Assembly (NCBI RefSeq): GCF_902459465.1
Contig: NC_047070.1
Coordinates: 18,600,001-18,664,000 of the forward strand
Length of the DNA stretch: 64,000 bases
Source of the DNA: Asterias rubens
Lineage: Eukaryota
Direction of reading: 5' to 3'
Positions within the stretch are counted from its first letter, which is position 1, and the number at the start of each line of letters is the position of its first letter. Positions 16,895 to 61,082 of the stretch are shown piece by piece. Under the pieces are notes generated by a model. The model was not told where the DNA came from. It did no database searches and saw only the letters and a program-made list of their open reading frames with translations. The position numbers and the translations under genes are program-made.

Positions 16895-16938
16895 TTCTCC
16901 TGAAGACGAGCAGAGTGTACTGTTCGAAACGTCGAGAC
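16895..16938 (+). ncRNA. Minimal type I hammerhead ribozyme motif (Penelope-like)
   Basis: TCTC-CTGAAGA-C-GAGCAG(AGTGTA)CTGTTC-GAAAC-GTC-GAGA: core CUGANGA and GAAA, 6-bp stem II, 4-bp stem I, palindromic loopless stem III. Confidence 0.7.
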
Positions 16939-25295: not shown

Positions 25296-25557
25296 TTAAT
25301 GGGGTGTTTGCCCGCATGCTTCAAGCTTATCATAGCATGAGCTTATTGGTGTCAAAACAACGGAAACATTAATATATTTCAGCATGTGCTGGTAGCGGCC
25401 TTCAACTGCAATTACTTTTTCCCCAGAAGACGATCAGATCATACTGATCGAAACGTCGAGTTGAAACCAACGGTTCTTTTCAGAACCACCCCCAACTCAT
25501 TAGAGATAGTCATTACATGGTGTTACCGCAAGCCTTTCCATATCGTATTTCCACCAT
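25296..25557 (+). mobile_element. Penelope-like or retrozyme-like repeat containing a variant hammerhead
   Basis: CCAGAAGACGATCAG(ATCATA)CTGATCGAAACGTCGAG; sequence downstream aligns loosely with that following the motif at 16900. Confidence 0.55.
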
Positions 25558-38119: not shown

Positions 38120-39403
38120 TCAGCATGATGTGATTCTATCGAAGATGTAATCCACTCTGGGAAGGCTCGACACGGGAGCTACCTGCGTTTCCGGGTCGAT
38201 CTGGGGAGTAGGTGCTGCTCGCCTCCCATTGGTGTACGCCACGCTGCTTTCAATACTGCTTCTAGGACTGTTGGAGTTCAATAAGCCAGCCTTTCTTTCT
38301 CTGATCTTCCTCATGATGAAGTTCAATCCGAGGATTCGTTTAAAGGCCTCCCGGAAGTCCCGATTAAAGATGCTGTATATGATGGGGTTGAGCGTGGAGT
38401 TGAGATACCCTAGCCACGTTAGGGTGGCGAGGAGAGCAGGTGAGGGATCGCACTTGTCACACAACGGTGTAATGATGTTCAGGGAGAAAAAAGGTACCCA
38501 GCAGATTAAAAATACCCCCATGATTATTCCGAGTGTCACAGCTGCCTTGTGGTCCGAGGCAGCTTGGTTGCCGTGACAGGACGAGTCCGGATTGTCGATC
38601 TTACCCAGTCTGCCCATCCGGGCGTTCCGTACCCGCTCCCTCACCGCGCTGAAGATCCGGGTGTAGATGGCGATCATTACCACACACGGCACAAAGAAAC
38701 TGATCGTAGAGGACACCACTGCATACGTCGGGTTCAAATCCAGCATGCAGATGTAGGCATTACTTGCGACCAGTACGTCATCAGGGACGGGTGCTGGGGT
38801 ACTTGGCGAAACAGCCGGTCCACCAAAACCCTTATGAAGGCCGAGTTGTATCGGTAAAAATGACACCAAAGCAGACATAATCCAAACAACACCTATTGCA
38901 ATCACAGCGCGTTTGTTAGTTATCCATCGATAATAAGCAAATGGTTTCTTAATATGGAGATACCGATCCACACTGATGGCGCATATATTCAGAATGGACG
39001 CAGTGCTAAACATCACGTCAAACGAGATCCAAACATCGCAAAACTCGGGACCAAAAGCCCAATAACCAAGCAGATCATTAGCCATGCCAAACGTCATGAC
39101 AAGTATCGACACAAGAAGGTCCGCCATCGCTAACGACACGATGAATGAGTTACCCGTCTTTCGGAGTTTATCCTCGGTGGCTACAGCAACACACACCAAT
39201 ACATTGCCGACGATGGATAGAATGATCAAAGTTGAAAGTACAAGAGCAATGGCTACCGTCTCTGCGACGGTGAGGTGGGGGCCCACCTCCACAGTGGACG
39301 AGTCATTGCTTCCAGCGTCCAAGCTATAGCCCCCACCACCGGTAGTAGCCGCATCAGACACGACGTCCCCTTCTTCTAGATTATATCCTACGTTGCCTCG
39401 CAT
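38120..39403 (-). CDS. DRD1: D1-like dopamine receptor (Dop1/DRD1 type class A GPCR), coding region uninterrupted, 427 aa from M69 of the listed ORF
   Basis: Seven TM segments; GN (TM1), LAMAD (TM2), D3.32 in FDVMFSTAS, DRY, TM5 serines (VVSSTISF), CWVPFF..N6.55, NPIIY, helix-8 FREAF. VMTFG..NDLLGYW.FG, LDLNPTYAVVSS and SDHKAAVT match the invertebrate Dop1R1 type as I know it. Confidence 0.92.
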   Translation of the reverse strand: MRGNVGYNLEEGDVVSDAATTGGGGYSLDAGSNDSSTVEVGPHLTVAETVAIALVLSTLIILSIVGNVLVCVAVATEDKLRKTGNSFIVSLAMADLLVSILVMTFGMANDLLGYWAFGPEFCDVWISFDVMFSTASILNICAISVDRYLHIKKPFAYYRWITNKRAVIAIGVVWIMSALVSFLPIQLGLHKGFGGPAVSPSTPAPVPDDVLVASNAYICMLDLNPTYAVVSSTISFFVPCVVMIAIYTRIFSAVRERVRNARMGRLGKIDNPDSSCHGNQAASDHKAAVTLGIIMGVFLICWVPFFSLNIITPLCDKCDPSPALLATLTWLGYLNSTLNPIIYSIFNRDFREAFKRILGLNFIMRKIRERKAGLLNSNSPRSSIESSVAYTNGRRAAPTPQIDPETQVAPVSSLPRVDYIFDRITSC

Positions 39404-40069
39404 GGAGTGGTTTGAAAGACCACCACTTCTCTCCCCGGACACCAACGCCTTCAGAATTGGCGAATACGAGGCGCGGAGTTGCATGTTTCGCCAGCAAAAC
39501 AGCGAAAACAAGAATTGTGTTTTCACACGACTTTTCCTGGCTACCTTAGTGCATCTAAATTGTTCTTGTTTGCGATCGTTTCCGTTTTTACCGGTTGTAT
39601 AAATCACTGTAAAAGGTGCCGTGGCTTGTGTTTCAGTTCATTTTGTCTATTTGCCATGGTTGACATTTGCTGACATCAATGTCAAATAATATCCCCACAA
39701 CAAAATAATCCTCGGCAGGTGCAAACTATTTCAAACTCGTCCATATCGGTTTCCCACCGAATCGTAAAACGAATCGGAAAACAGAAATCAAATAAAGGGA
39801 CACCGCGATGTTTTTGAAGAATATCAGAGTTTGACCACCCGGTTCATCCTACGGGGTTTCCGTATGTGCATTTCCTCCATAACACGCCAATTGTGACACC
39901 TGGTGTTGCTTCCCCTTCGCATGGCGTGGTATATAAAAAGCCTACTTCATCGTGCAATCATTTCCTATCTTTCCATCAATCCTTCGATTCCAACAACCAA
40001 GAGTCGAACACCACTCTAAAATCACCAGCTGTGGAGTCACCATGGGTATAGTCTGGTTGTTTGACTCAC

Positions 40070-50066: not shown

Positions 50067-50525
50067 TGACGTCAGCTCAAACACTGATGCACGTGCGGTC
50101 CGGCTAGGCAGCTGAAACATAAAAACCAGCCCCGTCGACATAATAGTTTTCTTCTGCAAATATAAACGATCCTTCTGGAAAAAAGTGAAAGCGATTTGGA
50201 ATACGTCATCATCACAACACAAAAGAAGTACCAATTTCAATAGGACGGCTGACGCTCATACACCAGGGGAATTTTTTTCTTTGTTGGGGTCTACTGAAGT
50301 GAAAGTTGCACAGCATTAAGGGTATAAAAAGAGTGAACTTGGACCATCAAGTGTAATAATATTACAGCTGCGTAGGAAGGAGAGATCACAACACCTTGCT
50401 GTTCAGAGAAAAAAAGGAACCGGAAAAAGGAGCGTCGTTTTTGTTTTTCTTTTATTTGAACAAGAGGACTGGTCAGAGATAACAGTGCTTCACTTTACCA
50501 ACCCAACAGAAGATCAAAGGTAAAA
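50067..50525 (+). promoter_or_regulatory. Candidate TATA promoter and non-coding first exon of the EGF gene
   Basis: TGACGTCA 50067-74, TATAAAAA 50323-30, donor AAG|GTAAAA at 50520; compatible acceptor at 55724. Confidence 0.5.
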
Positions 50526-53500
50526 ATAACCCATTTAATATTAGTCTGGCTTTAATCGAAATTGTGTATAACTTTTAGAATGCGAAAAAAAAGGTTACGG
50601 CAACATTTAAAACAGCAAAGACGTACTTGAAGACATTGGACATGTTTTATAATTACTCAAACCAAGCCTAACAAGATACTTGGTATGTGATAGGCAAAGG
50701 AGAGCAATCGATAAAACACTGTGGTTAACGACTCCCTCCTTAAAATGTTTGAATCTGAGAAAGACATTAGGTCTGAAGATGAAGGCACGCAAATGCAACA
50801 ATGGTGTTTGTTTGTACATTTTTATAGGATTAAAACAATCGAAATGGTAAAGGCAAAATAAAATACTAACAAAATAAACAAAAACGGAAGTTGGAAGTTG
50901 GAACGACCCGTGGTATATAGGCAAACATAAAAGCTAAACAATGTATCAGGTCGCCCCATGCATAGGGGAGGCCGTCCATCATTCGACAAAGCAACATCGA
51001 TTGCAAAATCCCCGAGGTAAAAAATGCATATATTATATAGCATCACTTGTAACTCAACAATATTGCATTAAACTAAATACAAACGAGTTTTATATCATAA
51101 CGTACACTTAATGCATAAGCAATAGTTTTTCAAATTTATGTCGTCGATCTTATGTTACTTCTTTGTGATAGCATTTCTAAATCAATAGTTTCCCCACCAC
51201 CAACAAATCCTATAAAACATCTCCACAACTCTAACGTTGGGCCTCGACTACTCTTTCGACTTTCCCTTACGCCTTGATGCAAAAAAATGCACCTCTGCGT
51301 TGTTATCAAAGTTGGACATTTCGGTTGCCATTTTGCCCAAATCAAGCAATCATTTTCAGAATAAAGCATTGTTTAATTCGATTGAAAAACGTGCTCTCAG
51401 TTTTGTTTTTCTGCGTCTTTTATACCTTTTTTTAAACAAGAAGTTGGACACTTTGATTGACATTTCTTTGAGTACAAGGACTGAGGATGGTCATTGGGCT
51501 TTGGTACACATTTCAGGGTACATTTAAAAGCAAATTGCAAATTTGTAAATGAAGAATATCATGGCTGTCTTTTAAAATTTTCCAAAAGACTAAGATTTTC
51601 CACGGTGGAAGTGACGTTTGCGAAATCAGTCTTTCGGTCACCTTGGGTATGAGTTAACCTTTGCCTTGTAATTGGTGACAAGCTGTTAATTGGCTTCACC
51701 AATAACTTTGAACACGTACACATTCAGTCCGGTGTTTCAAACAGGTGGACAGTGCCTATATAGCCAGAGCCGTAGAGGAGCCAAAGCCTATAATAACAAT
51801 ACGCGGCACATAGGGGCCTAGGCCTAATAGGGGACGAGTTAGGTACGAGTTGCAAGAATATTTTAACAAGAAGAATTATTTGTGCGTTTGCAACTTGACT
51901 GAGTATGAGTTGACGCATTGTATTAATTACACTATGACCCTAAGAGGTGAGAGCAAAGCAACTTAACCAGACCCAATGCGACCCTGTGGCTAAATTGAGT
52001 AAATTACAGCCAAACTGTCAATACCATCTACATTTTTATCCTGGGAAATGTTCCCCCAAGGGCAAATAAATCCACAATTGAATCTACACAGTTTACTGAA
52101 CACCTTCTTCAAACGAAAGTATTTCTACAAATGGCAATTTGTATGGAGGATTAAATGACGCAGGTCCCCTGGACAACTTGGACATATTCTAAAGTATTCC
52201 CATCACGCTCACCGTCATTAAACCACAAGAATGTAAAGCTGTTGGTTTATCACTTTTTCATGGTAAGGCTACCGGGAATTTTCTGACCATTCATTGTTGT
52301 CTATCAAGGTCACTAGTGATCTAGAAATACTAATAATATGATTTGGCACACACGCCCAAAAATAATAAGAATTTCAAATTTAAAAAGATACGCGTGATTG
52401 GTCAGTGATAATAATGGCATATTTTAGTGATTGGTCTCGGGTTTACGTTGTGGTCAAAGTAGCCCCACCCACCCTATATCCGGTTGCCGAAAAGACTTGT
52501 TTTTCAAAACACGAAAAATACAGTTATTGCCAAATTGTTCTAAATTTTCAACAGAAATACAAGAGCTGACCATCTGATGATGATGATGTCATGATCAAAA
52601 TAACAATGATGTAACTGCGGAGTGATTTTTTTCTACGGAGCTGTTTTCTACGGACCAACAATGAACAATATTATAGTGATTAGATAGACTGCTTTGTTTT
52701 CTCACAAAGTGAGTACCCCAATTTACCCTTGGACAGGGTTAAACAAAATATACATCTGTTTGTCATGTTTTAGTTCTAATTACTCGGTCTTGCATGTACA
52801 ACGTGTTATTTTGATATCAGTAGAAACATAGTTTTCTTTCAGAGTTTATAATCACTTACACAAACGGTTTATAGAGGCTCGCTCGCACAGTAATTTAATT
52901 AAAATCATGAGAAAGGAATTTACATAATTAATAATATCAAATGAATTATTCTTAACTTAGCAAAAAAGCACGTACTCGGCCATGTACAACGCTTATACAA
53001 ATAGTTGTATAGGCCCTACTTCAGTTTTCTCTTTTGTGGGCAGGGAGTGTAAGTCAGTTGACTGAATGGATTTAGCACCAACAAAAATATGCGAGGAGTT
53101 GAAAAGCTAAATCTGTAATCACAACATGTTTCATTTTACGGTAGATTCAAGAAAATGTACATTCCATTTACTTCTTTTGTAAAGAGATGTATATAGGGGG
53201 CTGGGCGATGTCGTTATATCCGTTCTTAGTCCAGTTATTTAGTTCCTGACTTGGCGAGAAATGCTGACCTCAACAAGTGGGATGGTTGTATTCCCAAAAC
53301 ACCATTATGTTGACTAAAGTGTCATTAGATTGAGTTTGTTCTGTTATAACAGATGTAAAAATTCTAAAGAAACATGTCACACAACGACAATGTCAGCTAC
53401 AAACGAATCGATGCAAAACGAAAACAGCAAAATGAGAGAGCGACACGGTCAAAGTCATACCTGCATTCCAATCGAATTCCTCTTTTTGTATAGTTTCAAA

Positions 53501-55683
53501 AGTATTATAATCGCTACCCGACATTTTGCGAATACCTAGCGGGCAAAATAAACACCTTGTCTTAACAATTGAATGAGAATAATTCGTCAAGATTACATTT
53601 TTCGCTCAAATGCTTAGACAGTTTATTTTTGCAGGCAATGAAGTGTACAGCCATGACAGATAATGGCTATAATAAATTGCCATCTTTTTGATGCAACATT
53701 TGGTTCAGTGACTATTGTGTGTAATCTGCGGAAGTTTCAGAATGGTTCAGTTCAGGTTTGAGTTGAGAGCTTACAAATAAAAAACAAATAATAACAATAA
53801 ATAGGAAATTGTGTTGTCAATCTTACTCCATAATGGGCTTCGAAGGCCACATAAAAAAAATGAAGTTTTGGTTCAAACAACTAAGACGTCGAAGTAGATA
53901 CGAAACGTCGCAAATAGCTGGCCAAGCCATGGCAACCTTCCTTAAAATATGAACAGTTTCTTATCAGCAAAAGACTAAAACTGAAAACCAGGGCCAGAAT
54001 TGTCAACATGTGACGAGCCTGTTAAAAAAGGCAATAAACGAACATCAATTCGCATTCTCTGCCAATTCAGATCATATTAAGTCTAAGTAATACTTGTCAA
54101 CAACGGCTGTATCTGATACGATATCTGTAATGGCAATTTTGTATTATGTTAAATGATTTTCTTTAATTAAAAAATAAACTTTAAAGAGGCAAATGTATAT
54201 GTGGCTAAGATAGTCCTTGGTTATTTCACGACTCCTCTTCTTCGCGTCTCCAATTCAAACAATGGAACATTCAAATAATTTGGGGCTTCAGTATTTAAAG
54301 CCTGTAACCCTGTCTTGAAAGCAGGCATAACTATTTCAACGAATATTTTTAATGACGGTTTATTTTTTTATGTGTAATATCACCCCAACGAAGATGATAA
54401 ACAAAATTTACTAAACAAAACAGTTTTTCTTTGAGAAGGATCAATGTTGCAATATTACTTTAAATATAATCCAGACACGGCATGACATCGTGAAGGCATG
54501 CCCGGCTGTGCATCGGTCAAGGTTACGGTGTAGTGAAAGCGGTTGGAATCCCAACACCACGACTCACTAATCACTTCCAAAAGAAATATTGTTGTTGTTG
54601 AACTAGTGGATACCTGTTGACACCAGTCTGGTATATTGTTTGTCCACAAATTTATTAATATAAAAAATGAAAGGATACAGTGCGTACAATACTTCTTTTC
54701 AATTAATAAACGAAATCAGGCGAGTGCTCATCATTCGTGTTAAATTTGACAACTTTGACGAGTTGGACACTTTACTATACCTATAAGCATCGCAACTAAA
54801 CGTATTCATAGTACGCCACTCTATAAACCTGTGTGACATCCTAGTCAGGGCCAAACTCCCTCCAGGTACAGGCCAAACACCCCTTCAGAAATACAGGGTT
54901 GTCAGAACTGTATATATATATGGCACTCGCTCTTCTTACAACATAAAGACTGACTCTCAATATGGCACATGGTAGTCTATCTTGTAAAAGAAATGCGGAC
55001 TGCAATATTAAATGGGAGAGGCTAAATCCAAACTATGTATACATTCATAATATTGTCTCGATTTGGCGACACCTTGAGGGCAATTTAATAGTTTAATTTC
55101 GCAGCTCGACCACATTTAGCCCCCACCCATTTTCTTTTTAAATGTAAAGAGTCTAGAGGGTTTCGCTCAGATGATTTTTATGATAACTTGAGTGTTTGAC
55201 ACCAACAATTTAAACTCAAGCCAATCCACCAATAGCGGGTTGTCAGTTTGATTGATTGATTACTACTGTGATTGAATGTATCAGGTGGGCTCCTACGTCA
55301 CTACATGATGGATGCATAATTAATTAGGTTAAGGTCGAGTCAGTCTCCGCACCCGTCTTTTTAAACTTGAATGACTTCATTACACAAAATACGAGGTTGA
55401 GGTCGATATACTCCGGGTCCCACTCGTCCCCTTGGAACTATGTTGCAAATAACAAATTGCACTAAACTGAATTTGGTGTAAACAAAACAACAAAACAATG
55501 CATAAAAATAAACTGTACTGGGATGGTCTCCTGTCGAAATGTGACAGCATCAGATGTTCAGGCTAGGTTTGTATGACGTGCTCGACAAGGATTGGCCAAC
55601 AGAACACCCTGACTTCTTTGTAAGGGCGCCTTGCTCAAACTGCGTCATGTGAATACGGTCAGCGGTTTAAGTTTTAAGTGTCA

Positions 55684-55697
55684 GTATTTATAAATAC
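55684..55697. promoter_or_regulatory. Palindromic TATA element just upstream of the signal-peptide exon
   Basis: GTATTTATAAATAC is a perfect 14-bp palindrome about 30 nt before the exon start at 55725; reverse CCAAT (ATTGG) at about 55591. Confidence 0.4.
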
Positions 55698-55764
55698 TCT
55701 TGGTTTTTTCTCTTTCCAATACAGATTTACACGCGCTGCCCGAAGTGACGACGTGACTAACGCC

Positions 55765-55819
55765 ATGAAGATACAACTTGTCATTGTGTTTGCGGTCGTC
55801 GCAATCACACAAAGTGCAC
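55765..55819 (+). CDS. Secreted EGF-repeat protein, coding exon 1 (signal peptide)
   Basis: GCCATG; MKIQLVIVFAVVAITQSA; donor GTGAGT, phase 1; acceptor at 55724. Confidence 0.85.
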
Positions 55820-56029
55820 GTGAGTTGAAATCTATCTTCACTGTTGGCGAAGAAGTGAAGTTTTTGAAAGTTAAACAAAAAACCTTTCTATAATAACAAT
55901 GACGCAGACTATTGGTGAAGTTACAACAAACCCTTAGAAAGGTTAACTTAATCACTGCATTTATAGCCAATAGCCAAATGGAGATAAGACAATGAAGAAA
56001 ATTTAAATTTCAGAAGAGAATTATTCCAG

Positions 56030-56145
56030 AAAAAAAAACCACGCAATCAGGTAGGGTCTGAAAACACAATCCACGCAAATTCGAACCGTGGTCCTAGAAG
56101 CAGAAGGTGGTAAAAGATACTACAACGTCAACCAGACCTCCCGAG
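56030..56145 (-). mobile_element. tRNA-derived SINE (family 3) fragment, intronic
   Basis: CAGGTAGGGTCTGAAAAC..AATCCAC...TTCGAACC, similar to 8520-8660. Confidence 0.55.
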
Positions 56146-56222
56146 TTTAAAACTTTCCAACTTAACTCCATTTTCCGTCTTGCATATTTAATTAATAATT
56201 GTTTATCTTGATTGCAATCCAG

Positions 56223-56339
56223 CATCCAACCCTTGTGATCCTAACCCGTGTGGTCGTGGATCGTGCTTCCGATCAGTAGACGGTACTGGTTATGCTTGTA
56301 ACTGTGAGGAAGGATTTTCCGGAGACACTTGTCAGTTCG
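56223..56339 (+). CDS. EGF-repeat protein, coding exon 2 (EGF1)
   Basis: CAG/GTAAGC, 117 nt, phase 1-1; SNPCDPNPCGRGSCFRSVDGTGYACNCEEGFSGDTCQF. Confidence 0.92.
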
Positions 56340-56955
56340 GTAAGCTACAAAAGCTTTTGGTTATAGCATGGAGGTTCTTTTTTCTACCTCCATGGTTATA
56401 GTAGGTATTCCGATTGGCCACAAAACGCTACACATGTTTTACACACGCCAGTGAGAAATAAAGAGGGCAAAAATTTAAATAGAATAAAATAATAACAAGA
56501 AAAACTTAAAGTGTTTCTTTGTTGCTGGATTCTAGATGTCTTCAGCATTTGATATGTTTAGTACTTTGTTGATATGTTGGTGAGAGGGCTTCAGGAGTCA
56601 TTTGCCGAAAAATGGCATTTCTGTTGCGATAGTCATTTTCGCATAGATTGACTAAACTATGATGTTTCCAATACTACCGCCATTCGTCCAATCAAACTTA
56701 TTTGCCTACTGGGGAACCAGTCACTAGTACATTTGTGTTTTTCTGAGGTTATTGCTATGTACATACAATTAATCTAATCATCCATGGAATTGATTTGTGA
56801 AACGTTGAGTAAAAGGGACGCTATATGCTTGTCTGTCAAGAACTCTACGACACAAACAAAGAGGTAAGTTTCTGCTGCTGTGAAAGAATAATTTAACTAA
56901 TACTTAAAAAAAAACAGCCCTCGCCATTTTTCTACGTTCTTTTTCTTTTTGGCAG

Positions 56956-57072
56956 GTCCATGTGACTCCAATCCATGTGTATCGGGAATATGTTTAACCT
57001 CGTCAATACGGAACAGTTACGCTTGCTTGTGTCCAGCGAATAGAGAGGGTACAAACTGCGAAATCGTTATAA
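56956..57072 (+). CDS. EGF-repeat protein, coding exon 3 (EGF2)
   Basis: CAG/GTAAGT, 117 nt; PCDSNPCVSGICLTSSIRNSYACLCPANREGTNCEIVI. Confidence 0.92.
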
Positions 57073-57616
57073 GTAAGTTATAAGATGAAAAAACACAAAT
57101 CTATTTTACATATATTAGCCTGTGCCTATTAACTTTAGATGCCTGGTTGAATTTTAGTGTAGTGTTGGGCTAAGTAATACCACTTGACATCGTGCCTATG
57201 TAAAGCACGGATCTACATGTTCTTAGATGCAGTCTAATTTTGGTCTGGGCTACATTGAGGTACAAGACTCCGACTTTTCTGGTCTAAGGTAAAAAGTAAG
57301 AGCTTTCAAAATGAGGGGCAACACTTTGGTTATATTTAGGGCCAGACTGCGATAATAGAACATGTATTTAGGGTTATATTGAGGTCCGGTCAATATTTGG
57401 GAATAAGACGTTCTCACAGAAAAGAAAACAAAAATGCGTAAAGCAGTTATTTTGAAAAACTTTGTCTTAAGTTTCTGTTAAGGAATGAACAACTTGATAC
57501 TTCGGGGAACAAACAAATAATTTCAGGAGAAAACAAGCACAACGTTTTTGAGCTCGTCCTCTCATTACTATTATTGGCAGTTAACCAATTCAGAAACAAT
57601 ATTCTTCTTCTTACAG

Positions 57617-57739
57617 ATGCATGCGATAGTAACCCATGTCAGAATGGTGGAATGTGTTTGTCTTCTAGTACTGACACAATGCGGTACATCTGCAGCTGTA
57701 CCTCGGGCCACACTGGAACACACTGCGAGAGCGACCCAG
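57617..57739 (+). CDS. EGF-repeat protein, coding exon 4 (EGF3)
   Basis: CAG/GTAAAG, 123 nt; ACDSNPCQNGGMCLSSSTDTMRYICSCTSGHTGTHCESDP. Confidence 0.92.
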
Positions 57740-58248
57740 GTAAAGAAACGAAGTGCCTGTGTGGCAGGAGATTCTGTGTGTCCCCCCTTCTACGGCAAAC
57801 TGTGTACAAACATCTTCTGATAGCGCCCTCTTTTGAATCCTCCTCCTCCAACCAATTTTAATTTCCCATATATGGGGGACCGACTCTCCGACGGAAAGAT
57901 TTCCCTGTGACCCCGGGATTGACGGTCTGACCATCGTCGACCCGTAGTTGTTTTATAGTTCCATTTCATTTTTGTTGGTGTTCAATCCAAACAAGTAAAA
58001 GAGTCTGTGTGTTCGATTTTCAATTACAGATCCGTCTTGTTTTGTGGCTTTTCTCTTGAACGGAATTCTATTGCAATAATATAACTAAATTTCCATATGT
58101 CCATTTGCCTATGCCCCACTGGCCACCATAATATGGCACAACTTTCTATTATCGTTGCCCCAAAAGACCACAACATTTTGTCACTCGCACCAAATTCAAA
58201 ATTCAAAATTCTAACACATCTGTTTTTGTTTCTTCATTATTTTTGCAG

Positions 58249-58365
58249 CTGCACCTTGTGACAGTTCTCCGTGCCTAAATGGCGGGGCGTGTACCCCAGC
58301 GATTAACGGTGGATACCTTTGCACATGCGCCGCTCAATTCGCCGGCCCACAATGCCAACAAGCAA
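58249..58365 (+). CDS. EGF-repeat protein, coding exon 5 (EGF4)
   Basis: CAG/GTAAGA, 117 nt; APCDSSPCLNGGACTPAINGGYLCTCAAQFAGPQCQQA. Confidence 0.92.
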
Positions 58366-58495
58366 GTAAGAGCTCGTCTGTCTTTAACTGTTCAATATCA
58401 TATGCTGTTTTCATACTTTACAATATATTTATAATTTATTCAAGCTAAGTTTCTCACATCTGTTGGGTGGGGAAACATATTCCAATGAAGGCCGC

Positions 58496-58650
58496 CTGTA
58501 CAAACATATGTGGATGTCCAACATCCAATATCCAAGTGTCAAGGTAGACATTCACTGTACAAACCTGATGTTAATGTCCAATGTCCAATATCTTAAACGC
58601 AACATCGATATTCGCTGTACAAACATAATAAAGTGAATGTCCAATATCAA
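58496..58650. repeat. Degenerate intronic minisatellite, ~60-bp period
   Basis: CTGTACAAAC at 58496, 58555, 58615, each followed by ATGTCCAA...CCAATATC. Confidence 0.75.
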
Positions 58651-58729
58651 ACTAACTTTACTGCCAAGGTTTTTTACCAATCACTAACAATCTCTAATCA
58701 TCCGCTTTTGATTATTTTTGTTTTAATAG

Positions 58730-58849
58730 TGTCATGTGCGTTCGATCCCTGTAAAAATGGAGGGTCTTGCTACCTTAACTATAATGATGGCGTCAATTAC
58801 ATGTGCAAGTGTCCAGACAATTATAAGGGGAAGGATTGCAGCAAACCAG
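58730..58849 (+). CDS. EGF-repeat protein, coding exon 6 (EGF5)
   Basis: TAG/GTAAGC, 120 nt; SCAFDPCKNGGSCYLNYNDGVNYMCKCPDNYKGKDCSKP. Confidence 0.92.
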
Positions 58850-59022
58850 GTAAGCTTTCCTGACTTCAAGGTCTAAAAAGGTGCTACTAGGGCAAGTGTT
58901 AAATGTTGTTTTATTTCGAGCAATTGTCAGTTCGCATTCTAATCTTTGATCGAGTACAATTTGTTGGTAAATTGTTTGGTCATGATTGTGTTTAAATATC
59001 AAGTTTACGTATTGATTTGCAG

Positions 59023-59133
59023 ATCCCTGTTCAAGCAACCCGTGCGCGGGCAACAGTGTGTGTTTGACTGAAGATGACGGTACATATTCCTGCCTGTGCC
59101 GATGTGGAACTGACGGTTCGTGTAGTAATACTG
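59023..59133 (+). CDS. EGF-repeat protein, coding exon 7 (EGF6, seven Cys)
   Basis: CAG/GTAAGT, 111 nt; PCSSNPCAGNSVCLTEDDGTYSCLCRCGTDGSCSNT. Confidence 0.9.
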
Positions 59134-59371
59134 GTAAGTAATATGCAACCTCTGTATCTGACAAAATGTTTAACAGGTGACTTCATTTGGGGCTTCTCCA
59201 CCAAGCATAGGCTAGTAATAGGCTTTAGGCCCTGCCTCTGGCTTTGGCTCACAAGTATTGGGCTCATCATTGTGCATAGTGTTCTGACACACCAAACGGA
59301 GCCCGATCAGCAGAACTGGAGTCCGAGTTGGAACAAGCTCTATACTTTTAAGCATTTTGTGTTAGATATAT

Positions 59372-59418
59372 CAATGTGAGACTTTGTAACGCTAGGTGGC
59401 AGCATTATACCAGGTGAA
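59372..59418. mobile_element. Half-copy of the 13043-13196 MITE, intronic
   Basis: GAGACTTT..AACGCTAGGTGGCAGCA..ATACC.GGT matches the reverse complement of the right arm at 13145-13190. Confidence 0.6.
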
Positions 59419-59489
59419 CTGCCAATAGAATAATATAGTGCTACAAATTGATCAACCTTTAAGCATCATGTTTCCCTTGCTCTTTGCAG

Positions 59490-60826
59490 ATAATGGAGAA
59501 GATGGAGGTACTCGCACAAATGTGGACAGCTCGACTCCGTCCGACACTACCACCCATGCTAATGGTCCAGACACGTTCAGCACCTCGTTCATGTGTTCTG
59601 AAACAACTGACCTTGTTGGCTGCCGTTTCGTATTCACTGAAATGAACAAGTGTAATAATCGCGGCTGTTGCTCCTCGGATGCTCGTGGGGGAGCAAAATG
59701 CAGTTGCTCGGATGGGTACGGTGGCAATCAATGCCAGTATGATTGTGCTAGCAGTCCAATTGGGTGCAGTTCATCAGACAGCAACGCTGAGAACGAGAAT
59801 GGAGGAACCGGAGGAACTGGTGGTGGTGTCAAATCACAAGTTGAGCCCTTCGTCTGCCTGGATGTATTGGCACCGTCCCCCAACTTACCATGCCTCCGCG
59901 TAGCAGAGGAGACAAACAACTGTAGCAGTCATGGTTGTTGCTCAATTGACTCGGACGGTGATGCTAGATGCAGGTGTAGCGGCGTCTATGGGGGTCCCCA
60001 CTGCCAGTTCAACTGCGCCCTTCATCCAGAAGATTGTGGTTCAGCCAATGGAGCCGGGGGAAGTGGTACTGATGGTGGTGTCATACCACAAGTTGAACCC
60101 TTCGTCTGTCTGGACGTATTGGCACCGTCCCCCAACTTAGCATGCCTCCGTGTTGGGTCTGAGACAAACAACTGTAGCAGTCATGGTTGTTGCTCAATTG
60201 ACTCGAACGGTGATGCTAGATGCAGGTGTAGCGGCGTCTATGGGGGTCCCCACTGCCAGTTCAACTGCGCCCTTCATCCAGAAGATTGTGGTTCAGCCAA
60301 TGGAGCCGGGGGAAGTGGTACTGATGGTGGTGTCATACCACAAGTTGAACCCTTCGTCTGTCTGGACGTATTGGCACCGTCCCCCAACTTAGCATGCCTC
60401 CGTGTTGGGTCTGAGACAAACAACTGTAGCAGTCATGGTTGTTGCTCAATTGACTCGGACGGTGATGCTAGATGCAGGTGTAGCGGCGTCTATGGGGGTC
60501 CCCACTGCCAGTTCAACTGCGCCCTTCATCCAGAAGATTGTGGTTCAGCCAATGGAGCCGGGGGAAGTGGTACTGATGGTGGTGTCATACCACAAGTTGT
60601 ACCCTTCGTCTGTCTGGACGTATTGGCACCGTCCCCCAACTTAGCATGCCTCCGTGTTGGGTCTGAGACAAACAACTGTAGCAGTCATGGTTGTTGCTCA
60701 ATTGACTCGGACGGTGATGCTAGATGCAGGTGTAGCGGCGTCTTTGGGGGTCCCAAATGCCAGTTCGACTGCGCCCTTCGTCCAGAAGACTGTGGTACCG
60801 CTAGTGGAACTCAAGCAAACCAATAA
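59490..60826 (+). CDS. EGF-repeat protein, terminal exon: Ser/Thr/Gly/Asp-rich linker plus five 10-Cys extended-EGF modules
   Basis: Acceptor TTCCCTTGCTCTTTGCAG, phase 1, open to TAA (then TAG). Summed CDS is 2097 nt = 698 aa + stop. Confidence 0.93.
59840..60800 (+). repeat. Coding tandem repeat, four 252-bp (84-aa) units
   Basis: Units start at 59840, 60092, 60344, 60596; units 2 and 3 differ at one base by my comparison. Confidence 0.95.
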
Positions 60827-61076: not shown

Positions 61077-61082
61077 AATAAA
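61077..61082 (+). terminator. Candidate polyadenylation signal of the EGF gene
   Basis: First AATAAA after the stop, about 250 nt downstream. Confidence 0.5.

What the first reader, a model, noticed from the sequence alone, without database searches (positions are those of the whole stretch)
55765..60826. Unrecognised secreted 698-aa cysteine-rich protein absent from the ORF track as a whole gene
Architecture: signal peptide, six EGF domains each on a phase 1-1 exon without the calcium-binding consensus, an acidic Ser/Thr/Gly linker, and five 10-Cys modules with Gly-rich spacers. There is no TM, GPI tail, CUB or avidin domain, so it does not match fibropellin, Notch/Delta or EGIP as I know them. 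EGF-rich secreted proteins occur in marine adhesives and extracellular coats (established); such a role here is inference.
Basis: partly seen in the sequence, partly recalled or inferred. Interest (0 to 1): 0.72.

Follow-up and report, generated by a model that had tools for sequence, protein, structure and literature searches.

The report
Starfish secreted multi-EGF repeat protein
This is a real, spliced and transcribed Asterias rubens gene for a secreted protein made of EGF beads and a starfish-specific, extra-disulfide version of the EGF bead; RefSeq already predicts exactly this protein, nobody has studied it, and its role is still inferred.

Summary
Eight GT-AG exons (55765-60826, +) give a 698-aa protein. 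It has a signal peptide, six non-calcium-binding EGF domains on phase-1 exons, an acidic Ser/Thr linker and five 10-Cys modules separated by Gly-rich spacers.

All seven coding introns are bridged by spliced contigs in four runs from four studies. Two alternative non-coding 5' exons lie upstream, ending at 50519 and 52708.

"Unrecognised" is only partly right. The protein is residue-for-residue RefSeq XP_033632696.1, "fibropellin-1-like [Asterias rubens]". That name is automatic and not borne out by domains: no CUB, avidin, cbEGF, TM or GPI features. I found no paper on the protein.

The 10-Cys module is not a new fold. It is an EGF domain with a long helical first loop plus four added cysteines. 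The 6-Cys form occurs in sea-star, brittle-star and urchin proteins, including a same-architecture paralogue 15 Mb away. The 10-Cys form was found only in Asterias.

Repeated modules differ in number (5 in A. rubens, 3 in A. amurensis) and are only 78-83% identical between species. Module 1 and the linker are 100% identical.

The protein is absent from the published footprint-protein catalogue. The most likely role is a glycosylated extracellular matrix or coat scaffold; this is inferred. The scan noted the same stretch separately (s1-181620).

The parts
50490..50519 (+). 3' end of alternative non-coding first exon A (donor GT at 50520). The exon start was not mapped.
   Evidence: A 28-letter loose end of an X4 contig at the 55723/55725 junction matches here exactly. 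There is no in-frame ATG in the 180 nt upstream.
52679..52708 (+). 3' end of alternative non-coding first exon B (donor GTGAGT at 52709). The contig carries 183 letters upstream of the junction.
   Evidence: A loose end of an X2 contig matches here exactly. In-frame stops lie upstream of the ATG.
55725..55819 (+). First coding exon: 5'UTR 55725-55764, ATG at 55765, signal peptide MKIQLVIVFAVVAITQSA (aa 1-18).
   Evidence: The acceptor AG is at 55723-55724. The signal-peptide call is from sequence inspection and hydropathy; no SignalP was available.
56223..56339 (+). EGF1 exon (aa 19-57), phase 1-1.
   Evidence: PF00008 at 29 bits. The joint 55819>56223 is seen in 4 runs.
56956..57072 (+). EGF2 exon (aa 58-96). 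Carries the O-glucose consensus CDSNPC.
   Evidence: PF00008 at 23 bits; joint seen; motif found.
57617..57739 (+). EGF3 exon (aa 97-137). Carries CDSNPC.
   Evidence: PF00008 at 33.4 bits.
58249..58365 (+). EGF4 exon (aa 138-176). Carries CDSSPC.
   Evidence: PF00008 at 32.3 bits.
58730..58849 (+). EGF5 exon (aa 177-216). Carries the O-fucose consensus CKNGGSC.
   Evidence: PF00008 at 25.8 bits.
59023..59133 (+). EGF6 exon (aa 217-253), with 7 Cys. Carries CSSNPC.
   Evidence: PF00008 at 22.7 bits.
59490..60826 (+). Last coding exon: linker, five modules with spacers, and stop TAA at 60824-60826.
   Evidence: AATAAA at 61077.
59490..59593 (+). Acidic Ser/Thr/Asp-rich linker (aa 254-288, pI about 4.05).
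   Evidence: It is 100% identical to A. amurensis over aa 254-285.
59594..59767 (+). 10-Cys module 1 (aa 289-346). Diverged from modules 2-5 (about 42% identity) and identical in A. amurensis.
59855..60037 (+). 10-Cys module 2 (aa 376-436).
   Evidence: The AF2 model has pLDDT 84.3, with a helix plus an EGF hairpin.
60107..60289 (+). 10-Cys module 3 (aa 460-520).
60359..60541 (+). 10-Cys module 4 (aa 544-604). Its 252-nt unit differs from unit 3 by 2 nt.
60611..60793 (+). 10-Cys module 5 (aa 628-688). Its C-terminal half keeps residues shared with A. amurensis (GGPKC, LRPEDC).
59816..60796 (+). In-frame tandem repeat: 252-nt (84-aa) unit, 3.9 copies, 96% matches.
   Evidence: pairwise differences.

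Best explanation
A single-copy, expressed Asterias rubens gene encodes a secreted, acidic protein of about 69 kDa before glycosylation (pI 4.4). It belongs to an undescribed echinoderm family built from EGF parts.

Shown: the gene model, its splicing and transcription, and its identity to RefSeq XP_033632696.1. Also shown: six non-calcium-binding EGF domains, and the EGF nature and echinoderm homologues of the C-terminal modules. The restriction of the 10-Cys form to Asterias within the proteins searched is shown. So are the change in copy number and the 78-83% identity of the repeated modules between two Asterias species.

Inferred: it works as a 'rod plus beads on a string' extracellular scaffold. 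The N-terminal half would be a short stiff rod of six EGFs, four with the Notch-type O-glucose consensus and one with the O-fucose consensus. A mucin-like linker follows. The C-terminal half would present five disulfide-locked knobs on flexible 23-29-residue Gly-rich spacers. Modules 2-5 each carry an N-C-S glycosylation sequon. This would give multivalent, low-affinity binding to other matrix or surface components in an extracellular matrix, cuticle or coat.

The four added cysteines most likely form two extra disulfides, C1-C5 and C9-C10, that stiffen each knob. The tissue and the binding partner are unknown.
For: Gene and protein:
- The spliced model has canonical sites.
- All seven introns are bridged in 4 runs from 4 studies, and the transcript carries alternative 5' UTR exons.
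- The model is identical to P0002 = XP_033632696.1.
- The orthologue P0001 in A. amurensis has the same start and the same C-terminal tail.

Secreted, not anchored:
- There is an N-terminal hydrophobic signal, no convincing TM window and a polar C-terminus.
- There are no dibasic or furin sites.

Domains:
- Six PF00008 hits; no EGF_CA, CUB or avidin hit.
- A module profile matches Notch, selectin, teneurin and PVFP-5 EGFs in the PDB from the second EGF cysteine onward.
- The AF2 model (pLDDT 84.3) shows a helix followed by the EGF beta-hairpin. Fold searches return only EGF domains.

Family:
- The same architecture occurs in A. amurensis XP_071792946 and Acanthaster XP_022096637. It includes one EGF per exon, a big last exon and an (I/L)PQV motif in the spacers.
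- An A. rubens locus with this architecture lies at C10:3595616-3605157.

Extra disulfides:
- In P0006 module 3 an upstream extra Cys and the 'GCC' doublet occur together, without C9/C10.

Matrix-like features:
- Acidic pI, 12.5% Cys, 13% Gly, a Ser/Thr-rich linker and glycosylation consensus sites.
Against: - No tissue, localisation, proteomic or binding data were obtainable, so the function is inferred from architecture alone.
- Multi-EGF proteins do many different things.
- Pfam's teneurin-type EGF model passes its cut-off on the C-terminal piece (34.5 bits) but not on the full-length protein (16.7 bits).
- The fast divergence of modules 2-5 between sister species fits a recognition role at least as well as a structural one.
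- The five-module count rests on the genome assembly only.
Confidence: 0.5

Rival explanations
1. It is a component of sea-star adhesive or epidermal secretions (tube-foot footprint or body mucus), where tandem EGF domains help form a cohesive meshwork.
For: Tandem EGF proteins are common in marine adhesives, and three A. rubens footprint proteins (Sfp3, Sfp4a, Sfp4b) are EGF-rich (PMC9382459). The module profile hits the mussel foot protein PVFP-5 EGF (7qab, E=6e-5). The transcript is present in runs from 8 studies.
Against: None of the catalogued Sfps matches. The complete ones are 170-3853 aa with other domains, and the incomplete ones carry FAMeT, lectin or vWF domains, or no domains at all. 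The published EGF-rich Sfps are described as calcium-binding EGF, unlike this protein. Tyr is only 2%.
Confidence: 0.15
2. It is a fast-evolving recognition protein (gamete coat, allorecognition or immune). The tandem modules would be the recognition surface, kept uniform within a species by concerted evolution and diverging between species.
For: Modules 2-5 are 78-83% identical between A. rubens and A. amurensis. The adjacent linker and module 1 are 100% identical (94/94), and the EGF rod is 95.7% identical. Repeats are nearly identical within each species, with units 3 and 4 differing by 2 of 252 nt. Copy number differs, 5 against 3.
Against: Within A. rubens, unit 2 against unit 3 shows 7 nonsynonymous and 4 synonymous changes, roughly dN/dS 0.6 by a crude site count, which is no sign of positive selection. 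The same pattern arises if each species amplified a different ancestral repeat. No expression data link it to gonads or immune cells.
Confidence: 0.12
3. It is an organic-matrix protein of the calcite skeleton (ossicles) or of mutable connective tissue, possibly a proteoglycan-like core.
For: It is acidic (pI 4.4) and repetitive, with Asp/Ser/Gly/Thr-rich linkers. The paralogue family has long D/S/G/T spacers with many Ser-Gly dipeptides. The sea-star skeletal proteome is reported as enriched in EGF-domain proteins (PMC5460417).
Against: That paper reports no acidic repetitive matrix proteins in the Patiria skeleton. This protein has no SGxG site. There is no link to any listed skeletal protein.
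Confidence: 0.1
4. It is a precursor or soluble ligand of EGF-type signalling, with modules released or presented to a receptor.
For: Fold hits include epiregulin, EGF and TGF-alpha. A related A. rubens protein (P0005) has five identical modules between acidic spacers, which looks precursor-like.
Against: There are no dibasic or furin sites anywhere and no membrane anchor. The fold hits are weak (E>0.01) and generic for EGF domains.
Confidence: 0.05

Closest known systems
Asterias paralogue and Acanthaster homologue of the same family (A. amurensis XP_071792946/XP_071792945; Acanthaster planci XP_022096637 'notch 1-like'; A. rubens locus C10:3595616-3605157)
   Same: Each has a signal peptide and five or six EGFs with one EGF per exon. 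The last EGF carries an extra Cys (CxCxC...). A single large last exon holds acidic Ser/Gly/Thr linkers with an (I/L)PQV motif and repeated long-loop EGF modules.
   Different: Their modules have 6 Cys (CxxMM...NCxxHGxC...CxC...C) and much longer Ser/Gly/Asp spacers. Overall identity is about 30%. The Acanthaster protein is closer to the paralogue (37%, E=1e-122) than to this gene (30%).
Fibropellin-1 (sea-urchin apical lamina protein; source of the RefSeq automatic name)
   Same: It is a secreted echinoderm protein made mostly of tandem EGF repeats.
   Different: From general knowledge, fibropellins carry a CUB-type N-terminal domain and a C-terminal avidin-like domain. Neither is detected here, and the C-terminal modules have no fibropellin counterpart.
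Notch/Delta-type EGF repeats
   Same: These are the best sequence matches for both the N-terminal EGFs and the module core. O-glucose consensus sites occur in 4 EGFs and an O-fucose consensus in 1.
   Different: There is no calcium-binding consensus and no DSL, LNR, TM or ankyrin parts.
Tenascin/teneurin-type EGF (Pfam PF23106)
   Same: The 'NC-x-x-HG-x-C ... C-x-C' core of the modules matches this model (34.5 bits on the C-terminal piece).
   Different: The match falls below the cut-off in the full-length scan. The first loop is longer and helical, and there are four additional cysteines. Nothing else of teneurin or tenascin is present.
EGF-rich marine adhesive proteins (A. rubens Sfp3/Sfp4a/Sfp4b; mussel PVFP-5)
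   Same: They are secreted tandem-EGF proteins. PVFP-5 is hit by the module profile.
   Different: This protein is not in the published Sfp catalogue. It has no FAMeT domains, non-calcium-binding EGFs and low Tyr.

Membership tests
EGF-like domain (Pfam PF00008) | Six-cysteine EGF signature scoring above the Pfam gathering threshold | tested here: met
   Each of the six exon-encoded units scores 22.7-33.4 bits against a cut-off of 21.5. The full protein scores 87.4 bits.
Calcium-binding EGF (cbEGF) | N-terminal [DN]-x-[DN]-[EQ]-C consensus, or a Pfam EGF_CA hit | tested here: not met
   No motif match. No EGF_CA hit at E<=1 on exons or E<=0.01 on the full length.
Fibropellin | CUB-type domain and C-terminal avidin-like domain flanking the EGF array (definition from general knowledge) | tested here: not met
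   The only Pfam hits are EGF-type models. The C-terminus consists of the 10-Cys modules.
Notch / DSL ligands | Transmembrane segment plus LNR/ankyrin (Notch) or DSL (ligands) | tested here: not met
   No such Pfam hits. There is no convincing TM window: the highest non-signal Kyte-Doolittle window is 1.62, inside a Pro-containing Cys module.
Teneurin-like EGF (Pfam PF23106) for the C-terminal modules | Score above the gathering threshold of 24.3 bits | tested here: inconclusive
   34.5 bits in 4 stretches when the C-terminal 444 aa are scanned alone, but 16.7 bits in the full-length scan.
EGF fold for the 10-Cys module | Two-stranded beta-hairpin with C-x-C and G-x-x-C arrangement; structural and profile similarity to solved EGF domains | tested here: met
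   The profile matches Notch1 EGFs in the PDB at E=6e-24, summed over several stretches. The AF2 model has pLDDT 84.3 with strands at 30-34 and 40-44. All fold hits are EGF domains, though each is weak (E>=0.01) as expected for 65 residues.
Echinoderm 'EGF array + long-loop EGF module' family (undescribed; defined here) | Signal peptide, 5-6 single-exon EGFs, one large last exon with low-complexity linkers carrying (I/L)PQV, and modules C-x9-C-x4/5-C-x8/9-C-x-C-x8-C | tested here: met
   Alignment A2, exon structure of the paralogue, and full-length BLASTP E=7e-81 to P0010 and 1.5e-66 to P0013.
Sea-star footprint proteins (Sfp1-15, astacin-like Sfp) | Listed in the published A. rubens footprint catalogue | tested here: not met
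   No listed Sfp has this length or domain make-up (PMC9382459).

The most novel reading that the evidence does not exclude
The repeated 10-Cys modules are a newly evolved, species-specific recognition surface. An ordinary echinoderm long-loop EGF gained two extra disulfides in the Asterias lineage. It was then amplified in tandem and homogenised by concerted evolution. It has diverged about 20% between sister species while the rest of the protein stayed 96-100% identical. That would point to a role in gamete, self/non-self or substrate recognition rather than bulk matrix.
Probability: 0.12. Interest if true: 0.6.

Novelty: new variant of a known kind. Interest (0 to 1): 0.3.

Why it matters
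The stakes are modest. The work shows that the automatic RefSeq name is not supported by domain content. It defines a small, uncharacterised echinoderm family of secreted proteins built from an EGF rod and long-loop EGF knobs. It also documents a clean case of domain elaboration: an EGF gaining two putative disulfides, with rapid concerted evolution of tandem repeats between two sister starfish species. If the modules prove to be a recognition or adhesive surface, the gene would be a tractable example of how new extracellular binding modules arise. If not, it is one more lineage-specific matrix glycoprotein.

Tried and rejected
- **Literature by accession.** Searches for XP_033632696/7, XP_071793194, XP_071792946, XP_033646832 and XP_022096637 found no paper.
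- **Literature by name.** 'Asterias rubens + fibropellin' gave nothing specific.
- **Footprint catalogue.** The published catalogue was read and holds no match. Its supplements are not held.
- **Skeletal proteome.** The sea-star skeletal proteome paper gave no link.
- **First structure prediction.** The module folded with only Asterias sequences was unusable (pLDDT 51.6). It was repeated with 23 family modules.
- **Paralogues of the C-terminal part.** The own genome returned only the gene itself at E<=1e-3. The paralogue appeared only when the A. amurensis paralogue protein was used as query.
- **Word-based homology searches.** These were swamped by low-complexity and EGF words and returned one cluster each.
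- **Related exons in the window.** tblastn of the protein against the window found none.
- **tRNA-derived element in intron 1.** ARAGORN found no tRNA.
- **LDV motif.** LDV occurs in modules 2-5, but the orthologue has PGV there, so it is treated as chance.
- **TM candidate.** The marginal hydropathy window at aa 623 was rejected because it is the Pro-rich start of module 5.
- **Tissue of expression.** This could not be determined because run metadata are coded and carry no library text.
- **Repeat copy number.** The tandem repeat itself was deliberately left out of the single read-laying run, so reads do not confirm the copy number.

Full report
**What is there**

Every intron is GT..AG. Exon 1 is 55 nt, and exons 2-7 are 117, 117, 123, 117, 120 and 111 nt, all entered in phase 1. 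The translation is 698 aa with 87 Cys. A purely mechanical ORF list shows only the last exon, as 59438-60826. The statement 'absent from the ORF track as a whole gene' is therefore literally true.

**Transcription and splicing**

Eight of nine holder rows for the last exon hold at least 80% of its sampled words. These come from seven studies, and their contig sets of 57-171 Mb are transcriptome-sized.

I laid four runs from four studies on 55600-59830. The tandem repeat was left out on purpose, because the tool turns away long repeats. All four runs skip exactly the seven predicted introns with GT..AG ends: 55819>56223, 56339>56956, 57072>57617, 57739>58249, 58365>58730, 58849>59023 and 59133>59490, allowing for the stated cut ambiguity. 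In two runs a single contig carries all of the coding exons.

The contigs continue upstream of 55725 into sequence that maps to two places in the window. One ends at 50519 (donor GT) and the other at 52708 (donor GTGAGT). These are alternative non-coding first exons. Variant B has in-frame stops before the ATG, and variant A has no in-frame ATG in the 180 nt examined. The ATG at 55765, followed by a classical hydrophobic leader, is therefore the start. The two transcript forms fit the two RefSeq accessions that share one protein.

**Identity**

A search with the C-terminal 444 aa found one cluster. Its members are as follows:

- XP_071793194.1, 'uncharacterized protein [Asterias amurensis]', 530 aa.
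- XP_033632696.1/XP_033632697.1, 'fibropellin-1-like [Asterias rubens]', 698 aa.
- A 200-aa product of two metagenome contigs.

My spliced model is identical to the A. rubens entry at every residue. The window is G000:C10:18600001-18664000. The gene is thus already predicted in RefSeq. What is missing is any characterisation: six accession and name searches found no paper.

**Domains**

Each of the six small exons scores above the Pfam EGF threshold. No EGF_CA, CUB, avidin or any non-EGF family is found in the exon pieces or the full protein. No [DN]-x-[DN]-[EQ]-C calcium-binding motif exists.

Four EGFs carry C-x-S-x-P-C, the consensus for Notch-type O-glucosylation. EGF5 carries C-x4-S-C between its second and third cysteines, the O-fucose consensus. 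The motif positions come; assigning them to those enzymes rests on established knowledge.

The mature protein is acidic (pI 4.4, about 69 kDa). The linker at aa 254-288 is Thr/Ser/Asp-rich. There are no dibasic or furin motifs. Apart from the signal peptide, the only hydropathy peak is a marginal window over the Pro-containing start of module 5. The C-terminal tail is polar. It is therefore a secreted protein with no TM or GPI anchor.

**The 10-Cys module**

Five modules follow the pattern C-x9/11-C-x9-C-x4-CC-x9-C-x-C-x8-C-x3-C-x6-C. Modules 2-5 lie in a 252-nt in-frame tandem repeat.

An exhaustive profile search of 1.84 billion representative proteins found only 35 hits at E<=1e-3. Only the Asterias cluster matched all 65 columns; every other hit matched the core only.

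Several hits proved to be real relatives with a 6-Cys version of the module, C-x2-[LM]M-x5-C-x2-[HR]G-x-C-x8-C-x-C-x8-C. They are the following:

- A. amurensis XP_071792946/5.
- Acanthaster planci XP_022096637.
- A fragment, P0035.
- Lytechinus pictus LOC129266045.
- Amphiura filiformis XP_072020329.
- A. rubens XP_033646832.

The first three share the whole architecture of the present protein, down to the odd last EGF (C-x-C-x-C...) and an (I/L)PQV motif in the spacers.

A profile of 23 modules aligns to Notch EGFs in the PDB from the second EGF cysteine onward. It also hits selectin, teneurin and mussel PVFP-5 EGFs. With that alignment AlphaFold2 gives pLDDT 84.3. The model shows a helix over the long first loop (residues 14-23) followed by the EGF hairpin. 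Fold searches return only EGF domains, each weakly, as expected for 65 residues.

The module is therefore an EGF domain with a long helical C1-C2 loop plus four extra cysteines. One is upstream, one turns 'G-Y-C' into 'G-C-C', and two are downstream. In module 3 of P0006 the upstream Cys and the CC doublet occur together without the downstream pair. This suggests the pairings C1-C5 and C9-C10. That is an inference; I could not read model coordinates.

**Family and evolution**

A. rubens has a second gene of this architecture at C10:3595616-3605157, on the minus strand 15 Mb away. It is 98% identical to the A. amurensis paralogue over the last exon. It has one EGF per exon and one large last exon.

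The Acanthaster protein is closer to that paralogue (37%, E=1e-122) than to the present gene (30%). The 6-Cys form is therefore the older one, and the present gene is the derived copy.

Between A. rubens and A. amurensis, identity varies sharply along the protein:

| Region | Identity |
|---|---|
| Signal peptide | 100% |
| Linker (aa 254-285) | 100% |
| Module 1 | 100% |
| EGF rod | 95.7% |
| Repeated modules | 78-83% |

A. rubens has four repeated modules and A. amurensis has two. Within A. rubens, units 3 and 4 differ at 2 of 252 nt, and unit 2 differs from each at 11. This is the signature of recent tandem duplication with concerted evolution, or of each species amplifying a different ancestral unit. 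The data here do not separate these explanations and do not show positive selection.

**Function**

No direct evidence could be obtained. The published catalogue of A. rubens footprint proteins contains nothing of this length or domain make-up. Its EGF-rich members are described as calcium-binding and mostly carry FAMeT domains (PMC9382459). That weighs against the adhesive suggestion but does not exclude it. The Patiria skeletal proteome paper offers no link (PMC5460417).

On architecture alone, the best-supported reading is a glycosylated extracellular scaffold. A short EGF rod would join a flexible array of disulfide-locked knobs for multivalent binding. I put this at about 0.5. The rivals are adhesive or mucus (0.15), fast-evolving recognition protein (0.12), skeletal or connective-tissue matrix (0.10) and signalling precursor (0.05).

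**Verdict**

- The gene is real and expressed, but it is already predicted in RefSeq under a name its domains do not support.
- The 'new module' is a lineage-specific elaboration of EGF.
- Interest is modest. It lies mainly in the module's origin and its rapid repeat evolution.

Noticed in passing
window 38120-39607 (-): An intact single-exon 495-aa ORF for a rhodopsin-family GPCR (PF00001 7tm_1, E=3.5e-66), about 11 kb upstream of this gene's first exon on the opposite strand.
   Followed up: partly
window 25467-25513 (+): Rfam histone 3' UTR stem-loop (RF00032) at 34.7 bits against a gathering score of 34, E=2.6e-6. This suggests a replication-dependent histone gene just upstream.
   Followed up: no
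window 57730-57871, 58440-58723, 59292-59433 (introns 3, 4 and 7): Contig word depths run from tens to tens of thousands here, often far above the exons. Many contigs run on into unlike sequence. These look like interspersed repeats that are abundant in the transcriptome assemblies.
   Followed up: no
L002 and L003 (ENA metagenome contigs ERZ23498661, ERZ1764478): Two metagenome contigs are 97-98% identical to this locus. They carry a 200-aa product with only module 1 plus one repeated module, joining 60040 directly to about 60569. This is either a short-read collapse of the repeat or a genuine 2-module allele.
   Followed up: partly
G000:C10:3595616-3605157 (-) (L004-L007, L010, L013): A paralogue with the same exon plan. 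It is 98% identical to A. amurensis XP_071792946 over the last exon. No A. rubens protein sits in that 90% cluster, so it may be unannotated or annotated differently in A. rubens.
   Followed up: partly
P0005 (A. rubens XP_033646832, another chromosome): A 360-aa secreted protein with five nearly identical copies of the 6-Cys long-loop EGF module. The copies are separated by acidic 'EEADELEERSSS' spacers, which gives a polyprotein-like look.
   Followed up: no
window 59858-59866 and the same place in modules 3-5: An LDV tripeptide (an integrin-binding motif in fibronectin) follows the first Cys of modules 2-5. A. amurensis has PGV there, so it is probably chance.
   Followed up: partly
window 16895-16938: Another first-stage note on this window reports a minimal hammerhead ribozyme motif. 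The Rfam gathering-threshold scan of the whole window did not report a hammerhead family there.
   Followed up: partly
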